Shown here piece after piece: positions 14,261 through 42,280 of a stretch of DNA of 64,000 nucleotides. A program made the position numbers and the translations under genes. A model generated the notes under the pieces. That model did no database searches, was not told the origin of the DNA, and saw only the letters and a list, made by a program, of their open reading frames with translations. Where the stretch lies: positions 310,001 to 374,000 of the IMG/VR virus record IMGVR_UViG_3300046665_000548, one strand, 5' to 3'. Every line of letters starts with the position of its first letter. Within the stretch, counting starts at the first letter, position 1.

Positions 14261-17200
14261 GTGACTACATTTGATTCCACCAGGAAAGACTCGGGCATAA
14301 CGCTGTCGAACGGTGATCTCACCGCGTCTAGCGTTACAGATGCTCCTTTGTATGTATTTGGAACAACTGGCAAGAGCACTGGAAAATTCAGCTTCACGGT
14401 ATCTACTCCTAACGGTTTTGATAACAATACATTCAGATTGTATCTTAGTAACCTTCCTTCATCCGGGGCTGCTCCAGCAGCCGGATATCTTGAAATCTAT
14501 CGTTCGGGTTCTGTCTGGGTCATAAACGACACCAATGGTACTAACAATAATTTCGGTGGAAACGCTCCATCATCCAATCCAGACATTCTAACAGTTCACG
14601 TCGATATTACTGCTCGTAAGGTCTACTTCAGTCTTAACGGCGGAGCATATTTCAATAGTGCTGATCCAGTAGCTGGTACTGGAGGATTTTCGATTCCAGG
14701 TACTGGTGATATCTATCCAGCAGCGCGTTTGAGTGCTTCAATATCCGTTAACGTCACTATAAATTTTTTCCCAACGAGTCTTCCATCTGGGTTCAGTTCT
14801 TGGGATGCTCCCAGCATTCAATCAGCCGATGGCACTTCTTCTGGAACTGGTGCTGCCTCTGGTGTAGGCGTAGCTCTAACTGGGACTCGTTTCGATCCAC
14901 TCAAGACAGAAACTGGTCTAACTCTCTCTAATAATGACCTTACTGTTTCGGGAACGGGTGGTGCCGGAAACTACACTTGGAGTACCACTGCCAAAACTAC
15001 TGGAAAATATAGTTTTGAAATTACATCAAGTTATTTCTACACTTCTGATCTTGTCATTTATTTGGATCAGCAATCGGGAGCATCAGCGCAACCGGGTCAG
15101 TTTACTGATGCTGGTGTGCGACTCACTTATCTTGATCCTATCATTCCCGGTTGGGGATGGAACGCTCGTGACACATCTTCAACCAATTTTTTCGATACCT
15201 CGCATCCAATAACAAACGGTTCTACTAATACCGTTCGTGTTCACGTCGATTTTACCGCCAGAAAAATATATTACGAAGTAAACGGTTCGCTTCTATACGG
15301 TGCTGATCCGGTTGCTGGTACCGGTGGTATATCAATGACTACAGTGGGTACACATAAACTGTGTATGGCTGTTAGTATTCAAGCTCATCCATCATCTGCT
15401 ACCGTTAATTTTAATCCAACATCTCTTCCATCTGGTTATACGGGATGGGATTATGTTCACAATTATCAATCAGGTGTCGGCACTGCCGCAGGCGTAGGTA
15501 CGGCAACTGGCAACGGTACAGCAGTCATATTGAGTAGAAGCACTTTCGACTCAGTCAAGACAGATGCTGGTCTTGTTCTCTCAAATGGTAATCGTACCGT
15601 TGCTGGGCCAGGAAATCTTGGCTCTCTCTATACGTGGAGTACAACAAGTAAATCTACCGGCAAATATAGTTTTGCTTTTACATCGAACAATTTTTACAGT
15701 TCTGACGTTCGAATTTGGATAGATGCTCAAGTTGGAACGAACTTACCAAATCAAAATGCGAACGGTGGTGTACGTCTTATTTACATCGATCCTTCGGCTG
15801 GTGGTCAGGGCTGGGGTGTTGTTAGCACGGTTCCTGCGAACACTTACGATGGGTTACATGCCATTTCGGCTAACACGTCATATACTATTCGTGTTCATGC
15901 CGATTTCACGGCTGACCGAGTATATTTCGAATTAAATGGTTCATATCTTTTTGGCGGCGATCCAGTAGCAGGTACTGGTGGCATAGTCATGAGTCCGGCT
16001 GCCGTCCAAAAAATATGTATAATGGTAGACGCGGTTGGCCCAAATCCTACTGGTGGATCAATTGACTTTGCTCCAACATCACTCCCTTCTGGATTTACTG
16101 CATGGGATGAAACACTTGGCACATCTGCTGGTACGTCAACGGCATCCGCTGTTGGTGCCGTAGCACCGCGTGGTGATGCCGCTGGCACGTCAACCGTATC
16201 TGGAGTCGGCGTCGCCTATCGACCCACACTTAAATTCTCTGCTGCGAACTCAGCAACCGCAACGACCGTAAGTATTCCGACTCACGAAGTCGGTGACTTG
16301 ATCGTGATCTACGCGATGCGTGAGAACGCTACGCCGCCAACACTTGCATCTGGCTTCACGAGCATCACGACTAACACTACAACGTTATTTGGCAGCATCT
16401 TAGGCTATCGTATTGCCACGGCCACTAATACAACATCCGGTACATGGACGAACGCACAAGAACTTATAGTCCATGTCTACAAACCACGAACCGGTGGTGC
16501 TATTCGTATCGGCAGCAGCGTTGTTGCGGTCGGTACCAGCACAACCCTGTCATGGTCTGCATTGACTCCACAGCGCACCAATAGCACGTCGTGGATTGCT
16601 GCATTCGGCGGTCATCGTTCCATTAACACGACATTGGAATCGCCACCTACCGGAATGGTCCTGCGAAATAATCTGGTAGATTCGCTCGCAGAAGTAGCCA
16701 GCTTCGATACGAATGGTGCTGTCAATTCGTTTGCCCTGTCAACAAAGACACCGGGCGGTACTGCTTCTGGTTGGGGTACAATCGTTGTTGAAATTCAAGA
16801 CCTTGCACAAATCATGCAAGGCAGTGCTTCTGGCGCAGGTTCAGCAACAGCAGTAGGTAACGCTGTAGGCATCATAACTGGTGTAGGTAATGCAACTGGC
16901 AATTCTACTGTAACTGCTTCTCCTAATATCTCTCGTCGCGTAACCTCATTCCCTGGAACGAACCCTGCATCATTCAATGGAGTAGCAACCAATAGTGATG
17001 GTTCGATCATGTATGCTGCACCATACAATGATTGTATTCTAAAGTCAGTCAATTACGGCGTTACATGGACTCAGCTTGCCGGTACATCGAATTTTTGGCA
17101 GGGCGTTGCTACATCTCATAGTGGCCAAGTTGTTGCAGCAATGGTACCCGGTGGAAGCATCTGGGTATCAACCGATTATGGTGCATCATGGACTGAAGCA

Positions 17201-20200
17201 ACATCTGCTGGCTCACATTACTGGCTTTCAATTGAAGTATCTGGCGATGGATCAACTATCATCGCTGGTGATGCTGATACAGGTGGCCGTGTATATGTAT
17301 CACACAACTCAGGTACGACGTTCACTGCTGTTGCAGGCTCGCATCCATGGCTTGGAGTTGCTTCATCATCTACCGGCTCTGTACTATATGCAGTCGGGGA
17401 TACGGGCAACTACGTTCAGAAATCGACAAATGGTGGTACGAGTTGGTCTTCACTGACAGCAGGACCAACCGGCTGGAATGGCGTCGATTGCTCTAGCGAC
17501 GGTCAGACAGTCGTTATCATCGGGTCAGGTAATGCGGCTAAGGTATCGACAAATGGCGGTACCTCGTGGGCTGATTGCCCAACTAGCGGTTCATTCAATA
17601 ACTGGAGCAACATCAGTGTATCCGACACTGGCCAATATATCGTACTTGCTGATAATACCGACTATATCTGGTTCTCTAGCAATTACGGTACTTCGTTTGT
17701 CAAGCAGAATCAGCCAGGATTCGGTCAACGTATTTGGATATCTGTGGACATCTCTTCAGATGGACAGTGGATCATTGCTGGCGAGTATGATGATGGTAGT
17801 GGCAAGGGCCAGATATATGTAATCAACTACTCTCGTCCCGTCTACGCATCTGGTTCTGGCACATCTAGCGGTATTGGCACAGCGGCTGCCGTTGGTAAAC
17901 CAATGTCGATTGGTCCGGCAGTTGTCTATGGCGCGACACTTGCCACCAACGATACGAACGTTAATATGTCGTTTCGCGTTGTTGCTACAGTTGTTGAAGC
18001 ATCAGATGGGCATCTTCGCATAACTTTTCAGTCTGGTTCAGGAGGTACCCTCGGTATTTCTCATGCCTCATTTGGCAAGTGGGATACTAATACTGGCTCA
18101 GCGGATACAACGGGAACACCTATCAAACTGACGTTTGGCGGGGCTGATACGTTCCAGATGAGCGGAACGGTTACCTCTGATTACGTCAATCACTCAGCAT
18201 CGTTCTCGCTCGTTCCTGGCGAAAAGATCGTCGTCATTTACGATACCACTTCATTTGGCGATGAACGCTATAGTGGTTCACTATCGGGTGTTGAAACGTG
18301 GTTCAAGGTTGGTACTTCATGGAGTACCCCGAACGTAACCGGATTCACAAAGCTTGCAGCGACCAACTATTCCGTTATAGCAATTGAATCAGTTAAGAGC
18401 TTTGAAATTCTACCATACGCTGGACCTACAGTTCGTTCAGTATCTAACACTGCGTATGTTAGTACGAGCAGCTTAGTTCTTAACAAGCCTACGGGAACCG
18501 TAGATGGCGATATTATGATCGCTCATACGTTTTCTGGCGTTGATTTCTATAACGACGGAACGTTCACTGCACCAGCAGGATGGACGTTGCTGACTGGTTT
18601 TCCGACAGCGGTAGACGTAAGTAACTTCTACGGTAAAATGTTTGTGTACTGGAAGCGAGCTTCTAGTGAAGGAAGCTCATACACCTTTACACAGAATAGA
18701 GACTTTTATACTCAGGGTGAAATCATCACGATCCAGGGCGCTGTTGCATCTGGTGATCCGATTGATGTTATCGGAATAGCTACAGGTCTTAGCCAGACAA
18801 GTGTCGTTAGCTCGGTCACCACTTCTGCTGATAACGAACTCGTATTGTATTTGTCGCACGACTGGGAAGGTAATGGAGCATTATCTCCTCCCGCTGGCTT
18901 TACTGAGATTTTAGACGGTCTTATCTATTCAGCATCTCGCCAACTTTCATACGCTTCAGCAACGGGTTCCGTAGCACAAGTTAACGGTAATCTCGGCGCA
19001 GGTGCTCCATTCGCCGCGTCTCTAATCGCGATTGAACCAGCCATCGCCAGTGTATCTGCTAACATCACCGTATCAGGCATCGTTGCCAACAGCGCGGTGG
19101 GCTCTCCGACACAAATCGGAATCAGTTATACCGCTGTCTCTGGAGTTACGGCTGGAACAGCGATTTCGGCACCGACAACGCAAGGCACGGCTAATAAGAG
19201 CATAACTGGCGTCTCTGCTGCCACACAAATTGGCACGGTTTCGACTATCGGCAGCGCTAACAAGGCACTGTCTGGTGTTTCGGCATCGAGCGCTGTCGGC
19301 GTTGCCACTGACAGGACGACAAGCAACGTAGCAGTTTCGGGCGTAGCAGGATCGTCTGTAATAAGCAGCGTGACTACTATTGGCCGCGCAGTTGTCTCTG
19401 CTTCTGGTGTGCAGGCATCAACGGCGGTCGGGATTGTCGCTAAAATTGGCAATGCAAACATCCTTGCGCCATCTACGACCGGTACGGGTCAGGTGGGAGG
19501 AACAGTTAATTCTGGCACGTCAAATGTAGCGCTGTCCGGAGTAAGCGCCGCATCGGCAATTGGCACGACAACAAACATTGGAAATGGAAACGTCCTTGCG
19601 ACCTCGGCGTCCGGCTCCGCTGATGTTGGAGTCGCTACCGGGGTTGGGACGACCACAGCTAGCATTGTAATTTCAGGAGTTTCTGGAACAGCAACTGCAA
19701 ACGCTGCTACAATTGGCTCAACGAACAACATTTCACTGTCGGGTGCTTCCGCAGCGACCTCCGTTGGAAGCACCACTGAGAGTGGTTCTAACAACGTCAA
19801 TATCTCCAGCACGACCGCATCAACCTTCGTCGGTTCTCCAAATGTGGGCGGGCAATCGGCTGCGGTAAGTGGGGGCGTTTCGGCGTCAACGTCATCTGGC
19901 ACGACATCCATCTCCAGCAGCGCTAATGTGCCTATTTCTGGGGCTAACGCGGCCGGTGCGGTTGGATCGCCTACGAAAATCGGATCGGCAAATGTTGCGA
20001 TTACATCAGTATCCGCCAGTGGTCAGGCCCAAACGCTTACCGGTATCGGTTCGGTTCAAATCGCCGCTACTGGTGTTCAAGGCGCAACAAGTAGTGGATC
20101 GCCAACTGTTTCGGGTGAAGCGTTTGTAGCGATTTCCGGTGCCTCGGCTAGCGTTGTTGCACAATCAAATACGGTAACGACGACTGCATCTGCGACGGTG

Positions 20201-22702
20201 ATCGGTGTTGTCGCCGGAACGTCTGCGGGCACAACTAACAAGACGACCACTTCCTTTACATCCGTCAACGGCGTCACGGCATCCATAAACGCAGGACAGC
20301 CTGCCAATATCGGCAACGCTTCGGCGGCAATCGTGGGCGTCTCTGGTAGCAGCGCGGCTTCGCCAGTCATAGTTGCCTCAGCGATCAATACCGGAGCGTC
20401 TGTCGTCGGTGTTAGTGGCACCGGAAGTACGGGCGCGACCACCGTCAGCACACAATCATCTGCTTCTATCGCGGGTATTCAAGGAAATGGTGTAGCTGGG
20501 TCTCCTAATGCGACTGGCTTTGCTATCACGCCTGTCGTCGGCGTATCCTCCAGTGCAGTCAGTGGTACTACTACTGAGAGCGGATCAGCTAACGTTCAAA
20601 TCACGGGAGCCTCGGCTAATGCTCTTTCAGGAGCGCTTACCGAGACAGGTTCTAGCTATGTCAATCTGACTGGTGTTTCGGCATCCGGCGTCAGCAGAAC
20701 AACAAGCGTTACGGGATCATCGAGCATTGGCATCACTGGTGTCCAAACAAGCTCTTCGGTTGGAACCACAACAGAGACATTTTCCGCCAACGTATCGCTC
20801 ACGAGCGCGAGCGCACAGGGTCTTGTTGGAACTACGGAACAAGCCGCAGGAACTGTTTTCAGACTCGAAGATGGCGTTGTAGCAAATGGTCAGGCTGGAT
20901 TGCCATCCGTCATTGGTCACGGAACGATTACTATCAACGGTGCATCTGCTACCGCGTATACCGGCACAACAGGAGAAATTACGGCGTCTTCGGCATCGGT
21001 CGCGGGCGTTGCAACGACTGGTATCGCTGGTTCTGTCGGTATCGTCGGCCGAGCCGTCGTTGATCTTCAGGGCGCAAGCGCAACTGCCCAAACTAGCAAC
21101 GCTCCAGTCAGCGTCACGTCATTCACTTCGATCTCGGGTGAGAGCGCAACTGCCCAGATCGGTATTGTTACTATCGGAAATATCGGAATTACGCTTGTCG
21201 ATCCACAGGGGGTAAACGCCTCGGGTAATGTTGGCGTGACGATTCCTTCCATCACGTCTAGCACGAATATTTCCGGCACAAGTGCTTCGACCCAGGTAGG
21301 AATCACAGATCAAAAGGTTTATGCCAACGTATCTCTATTGGGTACGTCAGCATCGTCGTCCGTTGGAAACGTGATCCCAGCGATACAGACCACTCTAACG
21401 GGCGTTTCATCCTCTGGTCAGGTTGGAACTTCTACTGTATCGAGTTCGTCCGCCGCATCGATCCTTGGTGTTCAGAGCGCTGGCGCGGTTCGTCCAATCA
21501 CTGGGGTTGGTAGCTTCAACACTACGATCTCTGGAGTCGAAGCAAACGGCTCGACAAATGATCTAGTCGTTCTCAGTACGGCGAATAGCACCATTGTCGG
21601 GGCCAGCGCCGCAGGTCTTGTTACTGGCCCGACCGTCACCGGCAACGCAGCTACAAACGTCTCTGGGGTCTCCGCAGCAGCTTCGGCGGGCATTGCAGCG
21701 TCTCGCGCCAACACATCGGTGGTAGCGGATGGCGTCCAGGCCACAGTTATTGCCGGTTCGCCTATAGAAAACGGCGATGCGAACGTACTGGCATTGGGAG
21801 TAGCCGCGAACTCACTCGTTGGTAATTCAGATGTAAATGGCGACACGTGGGTTTCGCTCACAGGTATCTCGGCTTCTGGCCAGATCAATTCAACCTCGGT
21901 TCGGGCCGATGCGGATAGCATCATTTCTGGCGTAAGTGGTTCCGGTCAAGTATCTGACGCGACCATTAATTCCGCAACGTACGCTGATATATTTGGAGTA
22001 TCCGCACAGACTGATACGGAAAACCTCACCGCAAGGCGAGACGCCATCGCGGTTCCCATCCAGGGCGTAGCGGGTGGCGGCACTGTTTCAAACGTATCAC
22101 CGGCTATCGCCAAGCTGGTTTCTGGTGTCGTGGCGACGGGTGTTGCAGATGCCGTCTACGCAGGACGAACCAGCAATAGTTCGATTGGCAACTTTGGCTC
22201 ATCCGCTGCTGGAAAGTCCAATACCCGCCCCGGTATGCACCGGTATGTTCAAAATGCCAGACCATATTATGACCATCTGAAGCCTCGTTTGCCGCGCTAT
22301 CGCATTCCGGCATCGCAGATGGTCGTGATGGAGTTTGTCGTTCCGACAGGCGGAAAAACCAAGCTGTTTCTGGTTCACACCGGCAAGGCACAGGACTATT
22401 CCGCTCAGGCATGGATCAGCGCGGAACCAGACGGGCGGCCGGTAACGTCAACGACCAATATGAGCGAAAAATGGTTTCCTAACCGGCGTGCGATCAATCC
22501 TGTCATAGTTTTTGATCAAGCCATTTCGACCCCTCATGGATTGACTGTCGGACTGCCCCCAGGACGCTATTTTCTCAATATTCTCAACGTCTCCAACGAA
22601 CCAAATGAGGTTGGTTTTTGGTTAGAAACTGGTATTGTGGTTCTTAGCGGGGCATCAGCCGGAACCGCCGTAGGACAGACATTTCAGTTGACCATTTCGT
22701 AA
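14261..22702 (+). CDS. Giant multidomain fibre/adhesin (2813 aa): 3 SPRY/ConA-like domains, BNR-repeat beta-propeller, 22-aa-repeat stalk, shared C-terminal domain
   Basis: Three copies of FD..K..G.TLSN.D.T...TGKYSF...DPVAGTGG...PTSLPSG..W; Asp-box-like S.(D/N).G.(S/T)W repeats; (S/T)GV.A....G every 22 aa from about 19050 to 22190. Confidence 0.85.
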   Translation: MTTFDSTRKDSGITLSNGDLTASSVTDAPLYVFGTTGKSTGKFSFTVSTPNGFDNNTFRLYLSNLPSSGAAPAAGYLEIYRSGSVWVINDTNGTNNNFGGNAPSSNPDILTVHVDITARKVYFSLNGGAYFNSADPVAGTGGFSIPGTGDIYPAARLSASISVNVTINFFPTSLPSGFSSWDAPSIQSADGTSSGTGAASGVGVALTGTRFDPLKTETGLTLSNNDLTVSGTGGAGNYTWSTTAKTTGKYSFEITSSYFYTSDLVIYLDQQSGASAQPGQFTDAGVRLTYLDPIIPGWGWNARDTSSTNFFDTSHPITNGSTNTVRVHVDFTARKIYYEVNGSLLYGADPVAGTGGISMTTVGTHKLCMAVSIQAHPSSATVNFNPTSLPSGYTGWDYVHNYQSGVGTAAGVGTATGNGTAVILSRSTFDSVKTDAGLVLSNGNRTVAGPGNLGSLYTWSTTSKSTGKYSFAFTSNNFYSSDVRIWIDAQVGTNLPNQNANGGVRLIYIDPSAGGQGWGVVSTVPANTYDGLHAISANTSYTIRVHADFTADRVYFELNGSYLFGGDPVAGTGGIVMSPAAVQKICIMVDAVGPNPTGGSIDFAPTSLPSGFTAWDETLGTSAGTSTASAVGAVAPRGDAAGTSTVSGVGVAYRPTLKFSAANSATATTVSIPTHEVGDLIVIYAMRENATPPTLASGFTSITTNTTTLFGSILGYRIATATNTTSGTWTNAQELIVHVYKPRTGGAIRIGSSVVAVGTSTTLSWSALTPQRTNSTSWIAAFGGHRSINTTLESPPTGMVLRNNLVDSLAEVASFDTNGAVNSFALSTKTPGGTASGWGTIVVEIQDLAQIMQGSASGAGSATAVGNAVGIITGVGNATGNSTVTASPNISRRVTSFPGTNPASFNGVATNSDGSIMYAAPYNDCILKSVNYGVTWTQLAGTSNFWQGVATSHSGQVVAAMVPGGSIWVSTDYGASWTEATSAGSHYWLSIEVSGDGSTIIAGDADTGGRVYVSHNSGTTFTAVAGSHPWLGVASSSTGSVLYAVGDTGNYVQKSTNGGTSWSSLTAGPTGWNGVDCSSDGQTVVIIGSGNAAKVSTNGGTSWADCPTSGSFNNWSNISVSDTGQYIVLADNTDYIWFSSNYGTSFVKQNQPGFGQRIWISVDISSDGQWIIAGEYDDGSGKGQIYVINYSRPVYASGSGTSSGIGTAAAVGKPMSIGPAVVYGATLATNDTNVNMSFRVVATVVEASDGHLRITFQSGSGGTLGISHASFGKWDTNTGSADTTGTPIKLTFGGADTFQMSGTVTSDYVNHSASFSLVPGEKIVVIYDTTSFGDERYSGSLSGVETWFKVGTSWSTPNVTGFTKLAATNYSVIAIESVKSFEILPYAGPTVRSVSNTAYVSTSSLVLNKPTGTVDGDIMIAHTFSGVDFYNDGTFTAPAGWTLLTGFPTAVDVSNFYGKMFVYWKRASSEGSSYTFTQNRDFYTQGEIITIQGAVASGDPIDVIGIATGLSQTSVVSSVTTSADNELVLYLSHDWEGNGALSPPAGFTEILDGLIYSASRQLSYASATGSVAQVNGNLGAGAPFAASLIAIEPAIASVSANITVSGIVANSAVGSPTQIGISYTAVSGVTAGTAISAPTTQGTANKSITGVSAATQIGTVSTIGSANKALSGVSASSAVGVATDRTTSNVAVSGVAGSSVISSVTTIGRAVVSASGVQASTAVGIVAKIGNANILAPSTTGTGQVGGTVNSGTSNVALSGVSAASAIGTTTNIGNGNVLATSASGSADVGVATGVGTTTASIVISGVSGTATANAATIGSTNNISLSGASAATSVGSTTESGSNNVNISSTTASTFVGSPNVGGQSAAVSGGVSASTSSGTTSISSSANVPISGANAAGAVGSPTKIGSANVAITSVSASGQAQTLTGIGSVQIAATGVQGATSSGSPTVSGEAFVAISGASASVVAQSNTVTTTASATVIGVVAGTSAGTTNKTTTSFTSVNGVTASINAGQPANIGNASAAIVGVSGSSAASPVIVASAINTGASVVGVSGTGSTGATTVSTQSSASIAGIQGNGVAGSPNATGFAITPVVGVSSSAVSGTTTESGSANVQITGASANALSGALTETGSSYVNLTGVSASGVSRTTSVTGSSSIGITGVQTSSSVGTTTETFSANVSLTSASAQGLVGTTEQAAGTVFRLEDGVVANGQAGLPSVIGHGTITINGASATAYTGTTGEITASSASVAGVATTGIAGSVGIVGRAVVDLQGASATAQTSNAPVSVTSFTSISGESATAQIGIVTIGNIGITLVDPQGVNASGNVGVTIPSITSSTNISGTSASTQVGITDQKVYANVSLLGTSASSSVGNVIPAIQTTLTGVSSSGQVGTSTVSSSSAASILGVQSAGAVRPITGVGSFNTTISGVEANGSTNDLVVLSTANSTIVGASAAGLVTGPTVTGNAATNVSGVSAAASAGIAASRANTSVVADGVQATVIAGSPIENGDANVLALGVAANSLVGNSDVNGDTWVSLTGISASGQINSTSVRADADSIISGVSGSGQVSDATINSATYADIFGVSAQTDTENLTARRDAIAVPIQGVAGGGTVSNVSPAIAKLVSGVVATGVADAVYAGRTSNSSIGNFGSSAAGKSNTRPGMHRYVQNARPYYDHLKPRLPRYRIPASQMVVMEFVVPTGGKTKLFLVHTGKAQDYSAQAWISAEPDGRPVTSTTNMSEKWFPNRRAINPVIVFDQAISTPHGLTVGLPPGRYFLNILNVSNEPNEVGFWLETGIVVLSGASAGTAVGQTFQLTIS

Positions 22703-30989: not shown

Positions 30990-31577
30990 TTAGGCCGAGA
31001 ACGGGCTCTTGAACTTAACCGTCTTGACCTGAATCTTCGCATCCTTAGCGGCCTTGGCCGCAATACGTGCAGGACGACTTGCAGCGGCACGCAGTACGCT
31101 GTTTGAATTCACGCGCTTGATGATCGCGCGATTCTCGTCATCGCTGATTCCGGCAAGCAGGGAATCGATGCCAATCTGGGTGATCGAATAGAGGCCAGTG
31201 GCCTTGTCCAGATGCAGGTGGCCGCTGCGGGCCGGGAAGGTCGCGACAGAATCCGACAGATACCACATTGCCCACTCGACGCGGAAAACGAAGAGCGACT
31301 TTTCGCGATTCTTCGGCTGCACGATACGAAGCTGCTGTGCAGTGATTCCGAGATCGTGAATCAGATGAGCGGCAACGATGTGATAGTTGGTCGGGCCAAC
31401 CTTGTTCACGACACGCAGTACGTCCTCAAAGAGGGAGTTGTACGTCGGCAGAACATCGGTACCGCCGATCTTGGCAGCAGACTTCTGGGGAGCCATCAGC
31501 GCCAGCAGCATGCTGGTAGCTTCGGCCATCTGAGTCTGTGCGGAAACAATAAGTTCAGCTACTTTGGAAAGAGACAT
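30990..31577 (-). CDS. Mrr N-terminal-like winged-helix protein lacking a nuclease domain
   Basis: LPTYNSL...VL.V...F.FRVEWA..YL.......GLY.IT..G; basic C-terminal tail. Confidence 0.6.
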   Translation of the reverse strand: MSLSKVAELIVSAQTQMAEATSMLLALMAPQKSAAKIGGTDVLPTYNSLFEDVLRVVNKVGPTNYHIVAAHLIHDLGITAQQLRIVQPKNREKSLFVFRVEWAMWYLSDSVATFPARSGHLHLDKATGLYSITQIGIDSLLAGISDDENRAIIKRVNSNSVLRAAASRPARIAAKAAKDAKIQVKTVKFKSPFSA

Positions 31578-31697: not shown

Positions 31698-32897
31698 ATG
31701 CGTGATTTCATCGACGGCGTTGCTTTGAGCAAAGCTTTTCAAGGTATTCTATTCCATGGTTCTCCCAACCATAAGCTGATCATTGACCACGAGAACGGCT
31801 CGCTATTCACGACGTTCGATGATGCGTGCAACTATGGTCCGAACGTCTTTGAATGCCGTGTAAACCTGCGCCGCCCATACACGCTGACCTCAGCCGATAA
31901 TCCACATGACCTAATGAATAGCCTTGGAAACGAAGGCTACGACGGTTGTATTATGGACCAGGATGGCGTTCGGAAGATTATCGTATTCGACGCCAAGTCG
32001 ATCACGTTCATTAAGCATCATGACGCCGCGTGTGATCTCGATGAAATGGACATTGAACAGAACGTTATCCTGAAAGAGTTTCGTCCAGGAGCCGGACAAC
32101 ACGTCTTGATGATCACCGGCAAGCTCGCCAAAGCCGGACTTGATCGCGTCATGAAGGCCCTAGGTACGGAAGACTTCACTTATGAAATCCGAAACCTAGA
32201 TATTGCAGTTGCAGCCTGGATCACGACGGACCTGATCAAAAATTCAATCGAAGACCTGGAAGGGGTCGATCTGATCCTGATTCCAGGCAAAGCCACGGGC
32301 GACGAAGAGCAGCTTGCGAAAGACCTTGGGGTAAAGGTCATGCGCGGTCCGGTCTGCTACAGCGAGCTTCCTGTGTTCTTCGAACACCACGGTGTTGAGA
32401 TCGATCCTGAAGGCATCATCCGGCCCAAGATCATCGTTCTGGGTGATGAGGCTGAGTACGCCGAAGCACTGAGCAAAACATACGAAGTACCGCACCTCAC
32501 GATTCACGAGATGCTAGACAGCCTCGGGAAGGAAGATGATCTTGTTCTGAAGATCAGCGAATTCATCTCGGATGGTGCGCCCGTCCCGCATTACCTGATG
32601 GCAGAACTCGTACGCAGTCGCCTTGTCATGCAGGATGTTCAGAAAGGCTACGTGCTGGACGGCTATCCCCACACGCCGCGTGACGCTATCTGGATGGATG
32701 ACATTAAACCGCAGCCGGACGTGATTGTTTCAATGGGATCGGCAGACCCTGAGGTGGTTGAGCACTATACGGGGAACCCGGCGCTCGTAGAGGTCGATTC
32801 ATCGGACCCAGAACGCACAATGTCGCTCCTCTACACGGGCGTCGAGATGTTGATGAGACAGTGCGTAAAGCCGGGAATGGCTAATACGAAAAAATAG
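31698..32897 (+). CDS. Fusion: ART-like domain + DUF6513-like domain + degenerate adenylate-kinase-like domain
   Basis: FHGS...YGPNVFECRVNLRRP...GYDG; ITGKLA..GL.RV...VAA.IT...LIPG...GD...LGV.V.RGP....LP.FF; GYVLDGYP with no P-loop. TAAATA 4 nt upstream. Confidence 0.65.
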   Translation: MRDFIDGVALSKAFQGILFHGSPNHKLIIDHENGSLFTTFDDACNYGPNVFECRVNLRRPYTLTSADNPHDLMNSLGNEGYDGCIMDQDGVRKIIVFDAKSITFIKHHDAACDLDEMDIEQNVILKEFRPGAGQHVLMITGKLAKAGLDRVMKALGTEDFTYEIRNLDIAVAAWITTDLIKNSIEDLEGVDLILIPGKATGDEEQLAKDLGVKVMRGPVCYSELPVFFEHHGVEIDPEGIIRPKIIVLGDEAEYAEALSKTYEVPHLTIHEMLDSLGKEDDLVLKISEFISDGAPVPHYLMAELVRSRLVMQDVQKGYVLDGYPHTPRDAIWMDDIKPQPDVIVSMGSADPEVVEHYTGNPALVEVDSSDPERTMSLLYTGVEMLMRQCVKPGMANTKK

Positions 32898-32918
32898 GCC
32901 AGTTTACTAAATATGTTC

Positions 32919-33173
32919 ATGGACATGGATCGCAAATTAGTCAGCAAAGAGCCCCACGAGATTTCTTATCTTGCGGAGAAACTAGGCGTTTCGCCAGAGA
33001 CTATTCGTCAGGCTCACAAGCAGGTAGGTCGTAGTCGCGCAAAGGTCGAGGCTTTTGTGAAGGCTCAGAAGGCAACCGCCGAAGCCGCTTTAGAAACACC
33101 ACCGACCGAACCCACCCGTGGTTTCGATCATCATTGGGTTTCTTCCCTCAACTATTCTGTTGACGTTCGCTAA
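32919..33173 (+). CDS. DUF3606-like small protein
   Basis: DR..V..EPHEI.YLA.KLGVS...I..A...VG.SR.KVE; TAAATA 5 nt upstream. Confidence 0.65.
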   Translation: MDMDRKLVSKEPHEISYLAEKLGVSPETIRQAHKQVGRSRAKVEAFVKAQKATAEAALETPPTEPTRGFDHHWVSSLNYSVDVR

Positions 33174-33309: not shown

Positions 33310-33393
33310 TGGCCGGTGCCCGGAATGGTATCGGAGCAGATTGTTAATCTGTCGAGGGAAACCTCATTGCAGGTTCGAGTCCTGCCCGGTCAG
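33310..33393 (+). tRNA. Non-canonical tRNA with GTT (Asn) anticodon and long variable arm
   Basis: Acceptor TGGCCGG/CCGGTCA, G73; D stem CCG/CGG; anticodon arm GCAGA-TTGTTAA-TCTGT; variable arm GAGG-GAAA-CCTC; T arm GCAGG-TTCGAGT-CCTGC; followed by CCT, not CCA. Confidence 0.8.
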
Positions 33394-33418
33394 CCTGACG
33401 ATCAAAGCGTAGTAGTAT

Positions 33419-33493
33419 TCCTGGGTAGCTCAGCGGCAGAGCGTTCGACTGTTAATCGAATGGTCGCAGGTTCGATCCCTGCCCCAGGAGCCA
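33419..33493 (+). tRNA. tRNA-Asn(GTT)
   Basis: Canonical cloverleaf TCCTGGG/CCCAGGA, TTCGA-CTGTTAA-TCGAA, U1-A72, G73, encoded CCA. Confidence 0.95.
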
Positions 33494-35344: not shown

Positions 35345-35402
35345 TTTGACCCAGAATAGTCTGCTGGAATATGGTGAACCATATTTTATTTGGTTCTTTA
35401 TC

Positions 35403-36293
35403 ATGTTGTTGCAGAAGCTCAAAGAGCACGAACTTATTCATCCACCGAAATGGTTGCCGGATAACACAATTTACCTGACCATTATGGGTTCGGTCGCGTA
35501 TGGAGTCTCGTCGGATACATCCGATATGGACCTTTATGGATTCTGTATGCCGCCAAAGGAACTGGTGTTCCCGCATCTTGCTGGAGAAATCCCAGGTTTC
35601 GGCCGCCAGATTGCGCGGTTCGAGCAGTGGCAGGAGCATCACGTCAAGGCTCCAGATTCCAACCAGGAATACGATTTTTCGGTGTACTCCATCGTGAAAT
35701 ACGTCAGTCTGTGTATGGAAAATAACCCTAACATGATCGACAGCCTGTTCACGCCTCGGCGCTGCGTGATCCATTCTACGGCGATCTCGGAGATGATCCG
35801 AGAACGTCGAAAGGAATTCTTGCACAAGGGCGCATGGCACAAGTTCAAGGGCTACAGCTACGCCCAGATGCACAAGCTGCGTGGCAAGTCGAATGCATCA
35901 AATCCGAAGCGTGCAGCGTCTATCCAAGAGGTTGGGTATGATGTGAAATTCGCCTATCATGTCGTCAGGCTGCTGTCTGAGGTTGAGCAGATTCTGATCG
36001 AGGGTGACCTCGACCTGGAGCGCAACCGCGAGCAGTTGAAGGCTATTCGCCGTGGCGAATGGACCATCGATCAGCTTGAGCAACATTTTGCCGACAAGGA
36101 AGCTGTTTTGGAGAACGTTTATGCGAATAGCACGTTACGTCATTCTCCGGACGAGGCAAAGATCAAGACGCTGCTGATCGACTGTCTGGAGCAACACTAT
36201 GGAAGTCTCGATAAAGCTATCGCGAAGGATAAATCGTCAGGTCAACTGATCAGCGAGCTTGAAGCCGTACTGGATCGTTTCCGAGGTGCGTGA
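35403..36293 (+). CDS. Pol-beta superfamily nucleotidyltransferase (RlaP/YcgL-like)
   Basis: GSVAYG.S...SDMD.YG...NPNMID.LF...GYDVKFAYH..RLL...IRRGE. Confidence 0.85.
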   Translation: MLLQKLKEHELIHPPKWLPDNTIYLTIMGSVAYGVSSDTSDMDLYGFCMPPKELVFPHLAGEIPGFGRQIARFEQWQEHHVKAPDSNQEYDFSVYSIVKYVSLCMENNPNMIDSLFTPRRCVIHSTAISEMIRERRKEFLHKGAWHKFKGYSYAQMHKLRGKSNASNPKRAASIQEVGYDVKFAYHVVRLLSEVEQILIEGDLDLERNREQLKAIRRGEWTIDQLEQHFADKEAVLENVYANSTLRHSPDEAKIKTLLIDCLEQHYGSLDKAIAKDKSSGQLISELEAVLDRFRGA

Positions 36294-36485: not shown

Positions 36486-36956
36486 ATGCGATACGCGGAT
36501 ATTATCAAAGAGAGCCTAGTTCGGAAAACCGTCTATCACGGTAGCCCTACGTTTGATGGAGCCACCCAAATAAGTTTGGGTCATCCAGGTCTGTTTTATG
36601 TAACGGACGATTTGGAATACGCCAAAGATTATGCTCGAAGAGGTTACATAAGCGTCTTCTCGATGCAGATGCAGAACCCTTTAGACTTGCGTGTCGCTCA
36701 AAACATCGAAGAAGCCTACCAGATTTACTCAGCCAATCCTCCGGACGTAGATGAACCGTACAACATCGAAACCGATGCTGGCGAAGAATGGGCTCTCCTA
36801 GTTTCGGAGGATGTGGTGAATCACTTCAAGCAGAAGGGCTTCGATGGTTTCGTGATAAACGAAAGCTCTAACGGGCTATCCTATGCCATCACAAACCCTG
36901 CTCGCCAACTCAAGCTGATAAGCGTAGAGAAGTCCCAACAGATGATGCCTAAATAG
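36486..36956 (+). CDS. ART-fold (ART-PolyVal-like) protein, putative internal head protein
   Basis: VYHGS...GLFYVTDD.EYA..YA...NPLDL...KGFDG..I; leader MRYADIIKE; TAAATA 4 nt upstream. Confidence 0.65.
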   Translation: MRYADIIKESLVRKTVYHGSPTFDGATQISLGHPGLFYVTDDLEYAKDYARRGYISVFSMQMQNPLDLRVAQNIEEAYQIYSANPPDVDEPYNIETDAGEEWALLVSEDVVNHFKQKGFDGFVINESSNGLSYAITNPARQLKLISVEKSQQMMPK

Positions 36957-39179: not shown

Positions 39180-39923
39180 ATGCAGATGTTCCGTGAGACT
39201 GTTCATTGTAATGAGCAATTGCTCGCTCCTTACGAGGGGTTTGAGCAAGTAATATTCCATGAGCATGCGCTGTCGTTAGAGTGGCGGCGCGCTCTGGATA
39301 TGAGAGAATTACGGATCATGGGCGAGATGGGTTCTGCTCGCCATGCCGTTATAGCATTTGAGAATGACTGGCGGATCAGTGCCGTAACGATGATCAGCGA
39401 CCAGTCCTTTGGCGCACTGTTGCATGGTGAAGCGAGGAGGCCGACTTACGAGGTCATGGTTGTTTCTCCATTTTCAGACGAAACGACCGATCCCGCCTAC
39501 CATCTGAATCAGACGATACTGCGCGAGCTTATCGAAGAGGTGCGCACGAAGAGCGGAAAAGCCTACAAGCGTCGTCCAGTTATTTCGGATGAAAGTATAC
39601 TCAGCTATTGCGATGCTTATCCGGCTGATCGCTCAGGTTATAAGCCCGATCTACACGGGTCGTTCGAGTTCCGCGAAGAGCATTGGTATGTTCCGGAATT
39701 CATGAACAATCGAGTTATGATCCCGGACGCAAACTGGAATCAAATCGTGTGGGATACCGCCAGATCGGGCGGCCGAGAGCCCAACATGAATCTACCCTAC
39801 AAGATCATCAACGAATGGTGTCAAAAGAACTGTACGGATGACTTTGCTTGGACAGGTGCCGCCGTCACTTGGACGTTTCGCGACGCCAACGACGCATTGA
39901 TGTTCAAGCTGCGATGGGGGTAA
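39180..39923 (+). CDS. Hypothetical protein with C-terminal 'FKLRWG' domain
   Basis: INEWCQKNC...WTFRDANDALMFKLRWG. Confidence 0.7.
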   Translation: MQMFRETVHCNEQLLAPYEGFEQVIFHEHALSLEWRRALDMRELRIMGEMGSARHAVIAFENDWRISAVTMISDQSFGALLHGEARRPTYEVMVVSPFSDETTDPAYHLNQTILRELIEEVRTKSGKAYKRRPVISDESILSYCDAYPADRSGYKPDLHGSFEFREEHWYVPEFMNNRVMIPDANWNQIVWDTARSGGREPNMNLPYKIINEWCQKNCTDDFAWTGAAVTWTFRDANDALMFKLRWG

Positions 39924-41547
39924 TTCCAGGTTGGGCACCCGTAGCAAATTTGAGCCGGGCGGCCTCGGCCTCTCCTACGTTCAGTTGGAAGGTTAGACAG
40001 AAGCGGCTTTCGCCCGCCTCTGGCCACTCCATCTTTCCGTTAAGCTGCTCGGCAAGCCTGTCAGTCATACGCAGGCCCATCGAACGAGTGTCACGATAAC
40101 CCTCGGTAACGCCTACGCCGTCGTCCGAAACGCAGAGCAATCCGGCTTCGTCCTCGACCTTAATATCAATACTGATTCGGCCAGACGTGCGGCCTCCGAA
40201 GGCGTGCTTGAGAGAGTTCGTGATTAGCTCAACGACAACGAAAGCAAGTGGGCTAGCATTATCGAGCGATACCAAGATATTTGCCTCGGTTTTCACCTCA
40301 GACGTGATCCCACGCGCGCCCGCGCCATATGCGGCCATGATCTCACCCACGATGTCTCGAACGAACTCTCCAGCGTCAACTGTTTTAAGATCATCTGACC
40401 GATAGAGCATAGCGTGAACCTTCGCCATCGCGCCAACCCGAGTGATTGCGTCTTCGAAGGGTTCTCTTTGCTCTTCAGAAAGATTTCGCGAGCTAAGCCT
40501 GAGCATACTCTGGATAACCTGGAGATTATTCTTAACGCGATGATAGATTTCACGAAGCAAAACATTACGCTCTTCCAACGTAGCGCTGGTCTGTTCAAGA
40601 AGGGTGGCTTGAAGTCGTTCCGTCTCAACACGGCGGCGCTGGTTCAGGAATAGACCGAGAGCGGCGAGACTGACTAGAACGCAGAGAACACCACCGGACA
40701 CCACGGACCAATCGCGACTCCTAATCAATGCATTATACACTCCGCGATCACTTGACGTGACAGTTGCCCAATTCGTGAGTTTCGATTTGACGTACGCCAC
40801 GAAAACTTGATTACCGTCGTATAGCGTAGTCGGTCCCGACCCCCGGCCGTTTTCAGTGATAGACTTTTGCAGGTTGCGATCTGCTTCCTTACCAAGCCTG
40901 ATATCGGGCTCCTTGGAACGCCCCACATGAATGTAGTTTTCGTCCAGAATGCCAGTAACGATCACGCCGGGTGGATCAGGCATGCTCATGAGCAGGTTCT
41001 GCATGACGGATCGCTTCATCAGCAGCATGAACACATACTGGATTTCTTGGCGTTTGATCGGCACCGCCAGCATGATAAACGGTTGGCCACGAATCTGCCC
41101 TGGCGTGTTTATAGAGAAAACTTTCGGTTCTCGAAGCCGAGAAAACTCTTCGACCGAAATTTTCGATGGAGGAAGTTCTGTGCCAAAGGGAGCAGCGGTC
41201 GTGAACAATATCTTTGCGTCAGACGCTCGGACCAAGGCGAGCGCATCCCACGTCGGCACGTCACGAACAAGCCTCTCCGCACTGTCATAAAGCAATCGAA
41301 GATTCTTTTCTGGATTATCAAACATCTCTAGGCGGGAGATGGCTTCGACCGCTCGGATATTCTCACGAAAATAGGTATCAAAGTTAGCAGTTACTTCGTC
41401 TGAACGCCTGAAGAGATCGTTCTTCATCTCATCGATGCTAACGGTTATCTGAGATGATACCCAGAACCCTGCAAACAAAAACAGCGGAACGAGAGCGAGG
41501 ACGATGCTCATCACCCCGACGTAGATGCTTTTGGTTGTGTTAACCAT
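39904..41547 (-). CDS. Membrane sensor histidine kinase, HisKA_2 family
   Basis: 2 TM plus Cache-like sensor; H-box LLREIYHRVKNNLQVI; N-box ELITNSLKHAF; G1 SDDGVG; G2 SMGL. Confidence 0.9.
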   Translation of the reverse strand: MVNTTKSIYVGVMSIVLALVPLFLFAGFWVSSQITVSIDEMKNDLFRRSDEVTANFDTYFRENIRAVEAISRLEMFDNPEKNLRLLYDSAERLVRDVPTWDALALVRASDAKILFTTAAPFGTELPPSKISVEEFSRLREPKVFSINTPGQIRGQPFIMLAVPIKRQEIQYVFMLLMKRSVMQNLLMSMPDPPGVIVTGILDENYIHVGRSKEPDIRLGKEADRNLQKSITENGRGSGPTTLYDGNQVFVAYVKSKLTNWATVTSSDRGVYNALIRSRDWSVVSGGVLCVLVSLAALGLFLNQRRRVETERLQATLLEQTSATLEERNVLLREIYHRVKNNLQVIQSMLRLSSRNLSEEQREPFEDAITRVGAMAKVHAMLYRSDDLKTVDAGEFVRDIVGEIMAAYGAGARGITSEVKTEANILVSLDNASPLAFVVVELITNSLKHAFGGRTSGRISIDIKVEDEAGLLCVSDDGVGVTEGYRDTRSMGLRMTDRLAEQLNGKMEWPEAGESRFCLTFQLNVGEAEAARLKFATGAQPGITPIAA

Positions 41548-42280
41548 TGATCGTAACCTTAAGAAGAATACACTAACGAACAGAACGGTTCGACCATTAT
41601 ATCCTCTAAACAGAAACCGTATTTCGGTAGCATCGTCAAGGGTATACTTCGTCACACTTCTCCGGAGATATTGAGTCTCAAGAGCGAGTCCCCATACAGT
41701 CCGATCATACCATTAGGGCAAAAGGAGGCTGGCCCGGCCGAAATCTGCGTCCCAAGCTTTGCTGCGGAGGGACCTTTGAGGTAATTGGACCCACAAGATC
41801 GCTGCTGCTTGGGCTGAGTTGGCACTCACCAAAAAGGCACCAAAAGATAGCTCGCAATGTCTTGACATGACAACGAGCTTATCTGACCCCGGTCGAGTAG
41901 GATTGGCTTGGGCAGATGCCAGCAGTAATGCTGAACCGCTATAGCGCGCTTGCGCGCAGAGAAGGGCGATTAAAGGGAGGGTTTCGGGTAGCCACCTCCT
42001 CCGGGTAGAACCGGTACATCGCCAATCCACTGTAGAACTCACGGAAATAATCTACAATTCTCCCCTGCCTCTTACCGAGATGCTAGACATGACTGTCGGC
42101 TATAAAGCTCTGTGAGTGGCAGGGGGAATAGAAGTATATAAAATCTTCGGAAATGTATTCATCCTCCTAAAGGATGATGATCATGAAGCATAAGTCGAAG
42201 ACGAAATGCTTCATGGAATCAGCAGCACAAGCGTAAGCTTGGGCTCTATAGAATCAGTTAAAACCACAGATAAATACAGC

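What the first reader, a model, noticed from the sequence alone, without database searches (positions are those of the whole stretch)
31698..32897. Tripartite fusion ART-like / DUF6513-like / P-loop-less adenylate kinase
Seen: three recognisable segments. The ADK-like part keeps PHL...ML, G..VP and GYVLDGYP, but KIIVLG runs straight into the helix with GxxGxGK deleted. Established: DUF6513 normally heads the dihydropteroate-synthase-like protein of methanopterin-pathway clusters in methylotrophs and archaea. Inference: a nucleotide-sensing pseudo-enzyme aimed at C1 cofactor metabolism, and a hint of a methylotroph host.
Basis: partly seen in the sequence, partly recalled or inferred. Interest (0 to 1): 0.6.

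Follow-up and report, generated by a model that had tools for sequence, protein, structure and literature searches.

The report
Three-domain pseudoenzyme of huge phages
A 607-kb phage encodes a conserved 399-residue protein that joins a degenerate ADP-ribosyltransferase-like domain, a DUF6513 domain that looks like a vitamin-B12-binding module, and an adenylate kinase that has lost its catalytic parts, so it most likely binds something rather than catalysing a reaction.

Summary
ORF 31698-32897 (+) encodes 399 aa in three independently folding segments: an ART-fold N-terminus, DUF6513 (Pfam E 1.4e-20), and an adenylate-kinase fold lacking the Walker-A P-loop, the LID and the two AMP-binding arginines. 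It is not an assembly artefact. About 10 tripartite and 35 two-domain relatives lie on independent metagenomic contigs of up to 457 kb, and the window is part of a 607,744-bp phage record.

New points:
- The family is small (20 clusters among 1.84 billion representatives). It has not been found in cells, where DUF6513 always heads a 470-940-aa DHPS-like protein.
- A few members keep an intact kinase. The P-loop was deleted at least 3-4 times, yet all three domains evolve at dN/dS about 0.06-0.07.
- DUF6513 most resembles the base-off cobalamin-binding domains of CFeSP, DUF512 and Mmp10. Mmp10's two cobalamin-contact residues align with invariant Thr140 and the Leu/Trp174 column.

Most likely this is a non-catalytic ligand-binding protein centred on a corrinoid-type pocket; that function is inferred, not shown.

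The parts
31698..32897 (+). Whole gene: 399-aa three-domain protein (P0001)
   Evidence: ORF list and translation. Start residues M1, R2 and I5 are invariant in the ten relatives that carry the N-terminal domain. Whole-gene dN/dS is 0.063 against the closest relative, L002.
31731..32051 (+). Residues 12-118: degenerate ART-fold domain, a distant ART-PolyVal relative
   Evidence: VIA-align: PARP2 3kcz Z 8.6, MbcT 6fkg Z 8.3, PARP1 Z 8.2, ParT 6d0h Z 8.1. BFVD hits to PolyVal ARTs. Pfam ART-PolyVal matches are only E 0.04-0.17. hhalign E 5e-5 to the genome's own ART-PolyVal gene. H20 of FHGS varies across the family (Y, S or F) and Y46 is not conserved.
32031..32084 (+). Residues 112-129: flexible acidic linker beginning at invariant Cys112
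   Evidence: pLDDT below 50 for residues 112-128; C112 and E120 are invariant.
32085..32393 (+). Residues 130-232: DUF6513 domain, the most conserved part; predicted base-off cobalamin-binding-like Rossmann fold
   Evidence: Pfam PF20123 E 1.4e-20. Mean column identity 66% against 31% for the whole protein. In the domain-only model (pLDDT 85.7) only four PDB representatives reach Z>=8, and all bind corrinoids: CFeSP 2h9a Z 10.3, DUF512 9cg1 Z 9.2, DUF512 9cg2 Z 8.9, Mmp10 7qbs Z 8.2. Foldseek ranks Mmp10 chains 1-7.
32115..32117 (+). Thr140 (TGKLA motif), invariant in phage and cellular DUF6513
   Evidence: Aligns with Mmp10 Thr291, the residue that H-bonds N3 of the cobalamin DMB tail (PMC11659888). 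Invariant in all 43 rows of A5.
32217..32219 (+). Trp174 (VAAW motif), invariant in the phage family; Leu in cellular DUF6513
   Evidence: Aligns with Mmp10 Leu322, the lower-axial residue under the corrin.
32355..32384 (+). Residues 220-229: phage-specific invariant motif CYSELPxFxE closing DUF6513 and leading to the kinase-like domain
   Evidence: C220, Y221, S222, E223, P225, F227 and E229 are invariant in 26 phage proteins. Cellular domains have DLKDLPxFFG at this place.
32418..32867 (+). Residues 241-390: adenylate-kinase-derived pseudo-kinase domain
   Evidence: VIA-align: 1aky Z 15.4, 7n6g_6M Z 16.0. Foldseek ADK E about 1e-7. phmmer against PDB ADKs E 1e-9 over residues 253-360. NCBIfam adk scores 41.5 bits against a 168-bit cut-off.
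32424..32453 (+). Residues 243-252 (PKIIVLGDEA): site of the deleted Walker-A P-loop
   Evidence: Alignment against P0010, P0012, P0013 and P0040, which keep G..G.GK[ST].

Best explanation
The gene encodes a non-catalytic binding or regulatory protein that belongs to a small family confined, as far as searched, to very large phages.

Shown:
- The family's core is a DUF6513 domain fused to an adenylate kinase.
- A few members still have a complete kinase, and most have lost the P-loop, the LID and the AMP-binding arginines.
- One subclade, including this window, added a shortened ART-PolyVal-like domain at the N-terminus.
- All three parts are under strong purifying selection.

Inferred:
- DUF6513 is the functional centre. 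It was captured long ago from the N-terminus of a proteobacterial DHPS-like C1-cofactor gene.
- It is a DUF512/Mmp10/CFeSP-type base-off corrinoid-binding module. Thr140 would hold the nucleotide tail and residue 174 would sit under the corrin ring.
- The dead kinase, tethered by the invariant CYSELPxFxE helix, would act as a cap or scaffold on that pocket. In ancestral forms it may have coupled the pocket to ATP/AMP.
- The dead ART-like domain would add a further binding or targeting surface.
- The protein would therefore capture, hold or hand over a corrinoid-like cofactor during infection rather than transfer phosphate or ADP-ribose.
For: - Architecture and folds.
- Loss of the kinase centre (P-loop deleted, R36 to D, R88 to H, LID absent).
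- Intact kinases in relatives: P0010 and P0040 (Pfam ADK 5e-30, positions 1-148 of 151) and P0012/13.
- At least 3-4 independent P-loop deletions on the family tree.
- dN/dS of 0.070, 0.058 and 0.073 for the three domains.
- DUF6513 is the best-conserved part.
- Corrinoid-domain resemblance from two aligners. Weak but concordant sequence signals to Mmp10: NCBIfam E 0.05 and PDB profile E 0.23.
- The published cobalamin contacts Thr291 and Leu322 of Mmp10 (PMC11659888) fall on invariant Thr140 and on the Leu (cellular) / Trp (phage) column.
- Family size and restriction: 20 clusters at E<=1e-30 among 1.84 billion; contigs of 100-607 kb; cellular DUF6513 only in long DHPS-like frames.
Against: - No cobalamin binding has been measured for any DUF6513 protein, and no paper mentions the family.
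- The sequence links to Mmp10 are not significant on their own. Z scores of 8-10 on a 100-residue Rossmann-like domain show a shared fold, not a shared ligand.
- In the phage family the lower-axial Leu is Trp, which could plug the site instead of flooring it.
- The phage shows little corrinoid context. There is no CobS_N hit, the RNR does not score as class II, and the only lead is a radical SAM protein with a sub-threshold B12-binding match.
- The relative orientation of the domains in the model is unreliable (pTM 0.44), so the 'cap' role of the kinase-like domain is conjecture.
Confidence: 0.4

Rival explanations
1. One reading: a nucleotide-sensing pseudo-enzyme that targets host C1 (tetrahydromethanopterin/methylofuran) cofactor metabolism. 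For example, the phage DUF6513 domain could mimic the N-terminus of the host DHPS-like enzyme and interfere with it in a methylotrophic host.
For: DUF6513 is otherwise known only at the head of the DHPS-like protein in C1-type clusters. The phage domain shares FTYEIR, TGKLA and LPxF motifs with gammaproteobacterial versions at 31-46% identity. The kinase part is indeed a pseudo-enzyme.
Against: - The phage carries no other gene of those clusters.
- The phage domains form a separate long-branched clade rather than nesting among host sequences.
- Family members come from many different samples with non-conserved neighbours.
- The canonical nucleotide-phosphate ligands are all missing.
- The host is unknown.
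Confidence: 0.15
2. An anti-defence sponge or decoy. The dead ART fold (an NAD/ADP-ribose pocket) and the dead kinase (two adenosine pockets) soak up nucleotide-derived immune signals or nucleotides. The ART-PolyVal ancestry hints at an early-acting, possibly virion-delivered protein.
For: Two enzyme folds that normally bind NAD+ and adenine nucleotides are kept under purifying selection without their catalytic residues. ART-PolyVal domains are typical of polyvalent and MuF-like phage proteins, as seen among the BFVD hits. The genome holds at least two further ART-PolyVal genes.
Against: The most conserved and universal part of the family is DUF6513, not the nucleotide-fold domains. The ART-like domain is absent from about three quarters of members. 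The phosphate-binding residues of the kinase are lost. PADLOC was not scanned, and there is no similarity to any known sponge family.
Confidence: 0.15
3. An active enzyme after all: a kinase or ADP-ribosyltransferase that uses non-canonical residues.
For: Strong purifying selection on all domains. The window clade keeps H20-G-S and Y46 in the ART-like part. Close relatives of the family (P0010, P0040) are probably true kinases.
Against: The P-loop is deleted, the LID is absent and R36/R88 are replaced. H20 and Y46 vary within the family, and no conserved Glu sits at the expected strand (the mapping onto PARP rests on my recollection of the PARP1 motifs). The ADK score is far below NCBIfam cut-offs.
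Confidence: 0.07
4. A decaying gene remnant or chimeric assembly with no function.
For: Catalytic motifs are lost in two of the three domains, and no RNA evidence is available.
Against: The open frame is intact in more than 40 lineages. dN/dS is about 0.06 with dS about 1.2. The identical architecture occurs on independent contigs from three data sources.
Confidence: 0.02

Closest known systems
Adenylate kinase (Pfam PF00406; e.g. 1aky, 1ake)
   Same: Same fold over residues 241-390 (Z 15.4). It keeps the core motifs G-[YF]-[VL]-L-D-G-[YF]-P, the NMP-binding helix pair and the C-terminal helix. Family members P0010 and P0040 are near-complete kinases.
   Different: The Walker-A loop is deleted, the LID segment is missing, and the R36 and R88 equivalents are Asp and His. 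Family-specific invariant residues have been added (RD..W, QQC). It is fused behind two other domains.
DHPS-like protein TIGR00284 (DUF6513 + pterin-binding barrel) of archaea and methylotroph-type C1 clusters
   Same: The N-terminal DUF6513 domain is homologous (31-46% identity to gammaproteobacterial copies; shared TGKLA, FTYEIR, VAA, PG, RG and LP motifs).
   Different: The phage protein has no pterin-binding barrel; an ADK-derived domain takes its place. The lower-axial-equivalent residue is Trp, not Leu. CYSE replaces DLKD and PGK replaces PGL.
DUF512 / Mmp10 C-terminal domain and the CFeSP large-subunit C-terminal domain (base-off cobalamin binders; 9cg1, 9cg2, 7qbs, 2h9a)
   Same: Best structural matches of DUF6513 by two aligners. 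The Thr that binds the DMB tail and the lower-axial hydrophobic position line up with conserved DUF6513 positions. Like CFeSP and MetH, the cellular DUF6513 protein pairs this domain with a pterin-binding-type barrel.
   Different: There is no significant sequence match to Pfam DUF512, no radical-SAM or Fe-S domain in the phage protein, and cobalamin binding is untested.
ART-PolyVal (Pfam PF18760) of phage polyvalent and MuF-like proteins
   Same: ART fold. The [HR]-G-S first strand, the F-[ST]-D second strand and the [YF]-D-G motif align with the two or three ART-PolyVal genes of the same phage.
   Different: It is about 30 residues shorter, scores only 13-15 bits (cut-off 31.2), its putative catalytic positions are not conserved across the family, and it is fused to non-polyvalent partners.
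IcmF-type fusions of a B12-binding domain with a P-loop NTPase chaperone (from my own knowledge, not tested here)
   Same: The logic of tethering a corrinoid-binding Rossmann domain to a P-loop nucleotide-binding domain.
   Different: The NTPase family differs (MeaB-like GTPase versus ADK). IcmF has a mutase barrel and is catalytic. No homology is implied.

Membership tests
Adenylate kinase | ADK/NMP-kinase three-layer fold with an NMP-binding subdomain | tested here: met
   VIA-align 1aky Z 15.4, rmsd 2.7, 143 residues aligned. Foldseek E about 1e-7.
Adenylate kinase | Walker-A P-loop GxxGxGK[ST] after strand 1 | tested here: not met
   The loop is shortened by 4 residues and reads GDEAEY. 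The Pfam match starts at profile position 13.
Adenylate kinase | AMP-phosphate-binding arginines (E. coli R36 and R88) | tested here: not met
   The alignment to PDB ADKs puts Asp opposite the Arg of GDMFR and His opposite the Arg of GFPRT.
Adenylate kinase | LID segment with catalytic arginines | tested here: not met
   There is a 32-column gap relative to P0010, P0012 and P0013. The Pfam match ends at position 120 of 151.
Adenylate kinase | Score above the curated family cut-off | tested here: not met
   TIGR01351 scores 41.5 bits against a cut-off of 168, and all equivalog models fall far below their cut-offs. Pfam ADK at 39.8 bits is above its domain cut-off of 26.8.
DUF6513 (PF20123) | Score above the Pfam gathering threshold | tested here: met
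   73.8 bits against 23.9, covering profile positions 2-85 of 86. The six-frame search gives 76.7 bits.
DHPS-like protein TIGR00284 | DUF6513 followed by a pterin-binding (DHPS-like) barrel; score of at least 256.65 bits | tested here: not met
   Only profile positions 2-100 match, at 39 bits. There is no Pterin_bind anywhere in the phage genome.
DUF512/Mmp10/CFeSP-type cobalamin-binding domain | Rossmann-like alpha/beta/alpha fold that superposes on the cobalamin domains | tested here: met
   In the domain-only model the four best of 48,161 chains are 2h9a (Z 10.3), 9cg1 (9.2), 9cg2 (8.9) and 7qbs (8.2); the next is 7.4. Foldseek ranks Mmp10 1-7 at E 2.6e-4 to 1.6e-3.
DUF512/Mmp10/CFeSP-type cobalamin-binding domain | Thr/Ser that H-bonds N3 of the DMB tail (Mmp10 T291) | tested here: met
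   T291 aligns with invariant T140 (residue role from PMC11659888; invariance). The underlying alignment has E 0.23.
DUF512/Mmp10/CFeSP-type cobalamin-binding domain | Leu in the lower-axial position (Mmp10 L322) | tested here: inconclusive
   The column is Leu in the 18 cellular DUF6513 sequences but invariant Trp in the phage family.
DUF512/Mmp10/CFeSP-type cobalamin-binding domain | Significant sequence match to the family model (PF04459 / TIGR03278) | tested here: not met
   PF04459 is not listed even at E<=10. TIGR03278 gives E 0.05, 12.4 bits. A profile-profile test could not be run because no DUF512 sequences could be fetched.
DUF512/Mmp10/CFeSP-type cobalamin-binding domain | Binds a corrinoid | not testable with these tools
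   Needs purified protein.
ADP-ribosyltransferase (ART-PolyVal, PF18760) | ART split beta-sheet fold | tested here: met
   PARP2 Z 8.6, MbcT 8.3, PARP1 8.2, ParT 8.1 over residues 10-118. BFVD PolyVal ARTs and PARP-domain proteins at E 6e-5 to 1e-3.
ADP-ribosyltransferase (ART-PolyVal, PF18760) | Score above the Pfam threshold (31.2 bits) | tested here: not met
   13-15 bits, E 0.04-0.17, in 4 of 9 family members and nothing in the others. The indirect link is hhalign E 5e-5 to a paralogue scoring 45.8 bits.
ADP-ribosyltransferase (ART-PolyVal, PF18760) | Conserved NAD-binding/catalytic set (H-Y-E or R-S-E) | tested here: inconclusive
   The window has H20-G-S and Y46, but H20 is Y, S or F and Y46 is Q, A, R or N in relatives. 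The invariant acidic residues are E52 and D98 only. No residue-level structural alignment was available.

The most novel reading that the evidence does not exclude
DUF6513 is an unrecognised branch of the DUF512/Mmp10/CFeSP base-off cobalamin-binding domains. If so, huge phages carry a dedicated corrinoid-capturing pseudo-enzyme, a B12-type pocket welded to a dead adenylate kinase and, in this clade, to a dead ART. It would also mean that the cellular 'DHPS-like' protein of tetrahydromethanopterin/methylofuran gene clusters is a corrinoid-plus-pterin protein built on the same logic as MetH and CFeSP.
Probability: 0.3. Interest if true: 0.75.

Novelty: new variant of a known kind. Interest (0 to 1): 0.55.

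Why it matters
- It gives the first testable functional lead, corrinoid binding with two named residues, for a domain of unknown function. That domain sits in the C1-cofactor gene clusters of methylotrophs and archaea, where the role of the DHPS-like protein is still unclear.
- It documents a clean natural series from an active kinase to a conserved pseudo-kinase within one phage protein family, with repeated independent loss of the P-loop under continued purifying selection. This is useful for understanding how pseudo-enzymes arise.
- It adds a conserved, phage-restricted multi-domain protein to the largely unannotated gene pool of 100-600-kb phages.

Tried and rejected
- PHROGs scan of the protein: no family.
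- tblastn against 50,697 phage records: only ADK-level hits at 24-28% identity, none with this architecture.
- Word search with the N-terminal 128 residues alone: no candidates.
- PDB profile search with the ART-like alignment: only chance-level hits, E above 0.7.
- Literature searches for DUF6513, MJ0107, DHPS-like plus methanopterin, and huge phages plus adenylate kinase: nothing useful. ART-PolyVal: two incidental mentions.
- Fetching DUF512 sequences for a profile-profile test: none in 3 + 301 Pseudomonadota genomes, so that test was left out.
- Corrinoid context in the phage: no CobS_N; the RNR large subunit does not reach the class II cut-off; B12-binding is only sub-threshold.
- C1-cluster genes in the phage: none.
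- Host or habitat: one weak DNA run holder at share 0.05 and no RNA; the 1191-aa ORF has no phage relative.
- Conserved neighbourhood: only the closest relative, L002, shares the Mrr_N and RlaP neighbours; L003 does not.
- Tree work: the careful search did not finish, so the quick tree was used. mis-parsed the domain starts of five rows and was replaced.
- One search failed on a wrong frame, and one search failed because a locus was given where a genome handle was needed.
- Complex prediction was not used because no protein-protein binding is claimed.

Full report
**What is there.** The window is bases 310001-374000 of a 607,744-bp IMG/VR virus record that CheckV rates complete. It is a tailed phage: a portal gene lies at 62529-63989. 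The ORF at 31698-32897 (+) encodes 399 residues. Pfam finds DUF6513 at residues 135-218 (E 1.4e-20) and ADK at residues 255-357, but only profile positions 13-120 of 151. NCBIfam finds many adenylate kinase models far below their cut-offs, and the first 100 positions of the DHPS-like protein TIGR00284. PHROGs finds nothing.

An AlphaFold2 model built on 26 relatives (mean pLDDT 78.8) shows three well-folded blocks separated by low-confidence linkers at residues 112-128 and 233-237. An exhaustive structural comparison assigns them as follows:
- Residues 239-390 have the adenylate kinase fold (1aky Z 15.4).
- Residues 130-233 resemble cobalamin-binding domains.
- Residues 12-118 have the ART fold (PARP2 Z 8.6, MbcT 8.3, PARP1 8.2, ParT 8.1).

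Against relatives that keep G-R/K-P-G-S-G-K-S/T, the window protein has a loop four residues shorter with no Gly-Lys signature. The 30-residue LID insert is also missing. In the phmmer alignment to solved kinases, the Arg of GDMFR (E. coli R36) faces Asp and the Arg of GFPRT (R88) faces His. No other ADK gene exists in the phage.

**It is a family, not an artefact.**
- The word search found 37 relatives, all metagenomic, on contigs of up to 457 kb.
- The exhaustive search of 1.84 billion representatives found only 20 clusters at E<=1e-30.
- About ten proteins share all three domains. The rest (260-340 aa) have only DUF6513 plus the kinase-like part.
- P0010 and P0040 combine the ART-like N-terminus with a complete kinase (Pfam ADK 5e-30 over positions 1-148 of 151; P-loop, R36, R88 and LID arginines present). 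P0012 and P0013 keep the P-loop, while P0011, P0016 and P0047 have degenerate ones.
- On a maximum-likelihood tree of the core, the 'deleted' state needs four changes, three of them forced by well-supported branches. The kinase centre was therefore lost repeatedly (quick tree, SH-aLRT support only).
- Between the window gene and its closest relative, dN/dS is 0.070, 0.058 and 0.073 for the ART-like, DUF6513 and kinase-like parts. dS is about 1.1-1.3, so it is near saturation.
- All three modules are therefore maintained by selection without canonical catalysis.

**DUF6513.** It is the best-conserved block, with 66% mean column identity against 31% overall.

In cells it has a different partner. 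A motif-guided scan of one genome per species returned 34 loci, all in Gammaproteobacteria MAGs, each in a 455-570-aa frame apart from two cut at contig ends. In L007 the protein is a 528-aa TIGR00284 member flanked by pqqB/C/E and by DUF447 plus a 4-HFC-P-synthase-like gene. In 301 sampled Pseudomonadota genomes, 13 carry one copy each, in 491-944-aa frames. The phage domains form one clade (support 100) outside the cellular ones, on long branches.

A domain-only model built on 25 phage and 18 cellular sequences (pLDDT 85.7, pTM 0.78) was compared with 48,161 PDB representatives. Only four reach Z>=8, and all are corrinoid binders:
- the C-terminal domain of the corrinoid iron-sulfur protein (2h9a, Z 10.3);
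- two DUF512 proteins (9cg1, Z 9.2; 9cg2, Z 8.9);
- Mmp10 (7qbs, Z 8.2, 25% identity).

The next hit scores 7.4. Foldseek independently ranks Mmp10 chains 1-7. Weak sequence signals point the same way: TIGR03278 E 0.05 and a PDB profile hit on Mmp10 at E 0.23.

The DUF512 structure paper (PMC11659888) names Thr291 of Mmp10 as the residue that H-bonds N3 of the DMB tail, and Leu322 as the lower-axial residue. In the alignment the PDB chain index runs 25 ahead of the native numbering, and with that offset positions 291 and 322 are indeed Thr and Leu, which checks the offset. Thr291 then falls on Thr140, invariant in all 43 phage and cellular sequences. Leu322 falls on the VAA[L/W] column, which is Leu in cells and Trp in phages. 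I infer that DUF6513 is a DUF512-type base-off corrinoid-binding domain. This has not been shown.

**The ART-like part.**
- Pfam gives only 13-15-bit ART-PolyVal hits.
- A profile of the ten N-termini finds a genuine ART-PolyVal gene elsewhere in this genome (hmmsearch E 4e-4, hhalign E 5e-5; its own Pfam score is 45.8 bits).
- The phage has two solid ART-PolyVal genes, plus a weaker one 3.6 kb downstream in the window.
- BFVD structure hits are dominated by PolyVal ARTs and PARP-domain proteins.
- H20 of FHGS and Y46 are not conserved in the family. By my recollection of the PARP1 motifs, the catalytic Glu position is Lys93.
- Catalytic competence is therefore doubtful.

**Interpretation.** The best-supported reading is a non-catalytic ligand-binding protein centred on DUF6513, with the kinase- and ART-derived modules kept as scaffold or accessory pockets. 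The ligand is proposed to be a corrinoid.

Against it:
- there is no biochemical evidence;
- the lower-axial Leu is Trp in phages;
- the phage shows little B12 context.

No other C1 genes are present, the neighbours are not conserved, and the host is unknown. A nucleotide-signal sponge remains possible. Active catalysis and a pseudogene or assembly artefact are unlikely.

**Novelty.** The folds are known. What is new is this architecture, its restriction to huge phages, the repeated decay of the kinase under selection, and the cobalamin-domain reading of DUF6513.

Noticed in passing
window 33310-33395 and 33419-33493 (+): Two tandem tRNA-Asn(GTT) genes lie just downstream of the gene. The first is 86 nt, long for a tRNA-Asn. 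The second matches tRNA regions of unrelated phages at 88-91% identity.
   Followed up: no
window 36486-36956 (+); G000:117175-117573 and G000:280189-280569 (outside the window): The phage carries a small paralogous set of ART-PolyVal-like genes. Two score above the Pfam cut-off and the one in the window scores 29 bits. The N-terminal domain of the studied protein is a shortened relative of these.
   Followed up: partly
L007:5896-7482 and 33 other genome loci (L008-L040): The cellular 'DHPS-like' protein TIGR00284 pairs a cobalamin-domain-like DUF6513 with a pterin-binding-type barrel, the same logic as MetH and CFeSP. It sits beside DUF447 and a 4-HFC-P-synthase-like gene. This suggests a corrinoid-dependent step in H4MPT/methylofuran-type clusters.
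   Followed up: partly
P0001 residues 53, 112, 220, 389 (window 31854-31856, 32031-32033, 32355-32357, 32862-32864): Four cysteines, one or more per domain or linker, are invariant or nearly so. C220 and C389 are conserved across the whole family, and C53 and C112 across the ART-bearing clade. They could form a metal site or a disulfide link between domains.
   Followed up: no
window 30990-31577 (-) and 35346-36293 (+): An Mrr_N-like 195-aa ORF lies upstream, and an RlaP/phrog_388 nucleotidyltransferase lies downstream. Both are also neighbours of the gene in the closest relative, L002, but not in L003.
   Followed up: partly
window 14261-22702 (+), 1273-5493 (-), 7077-10652 (+): Three giant ORFs of 2813, 1406 and 1191 aa have no PHROG match. 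The 1191-aa one has no tblastn match in 50,697 phage records.
   Followed up: no
G000:518753-520321 (L045:1435-3003), outside the window: A 522-aa radical SAM protein has a sub-threshold N-terminal B12-binding match (E 1.9e-4) and lies directly after a topoisomerase IV/gyrase A-like gene. It is the only other corrinoid-related lead in the phage.
   Followed up: partly
window 62529-63989 (-) and 39904-41655 (-): There is a portal protein (phrog_213, E 4e-81) and a 583-aa protein with a phage 'kinase' PHROG match. The relative L002 also carries an HWE-type histidine kinase near the gene.
   Followed up: no
window 32913-33173 (+): An 86-aa DUF3606 protein with an HTH-like region starts 16 bp after the stop codon of the studied gene. 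It may be co-transcribed.
   Followed up: no
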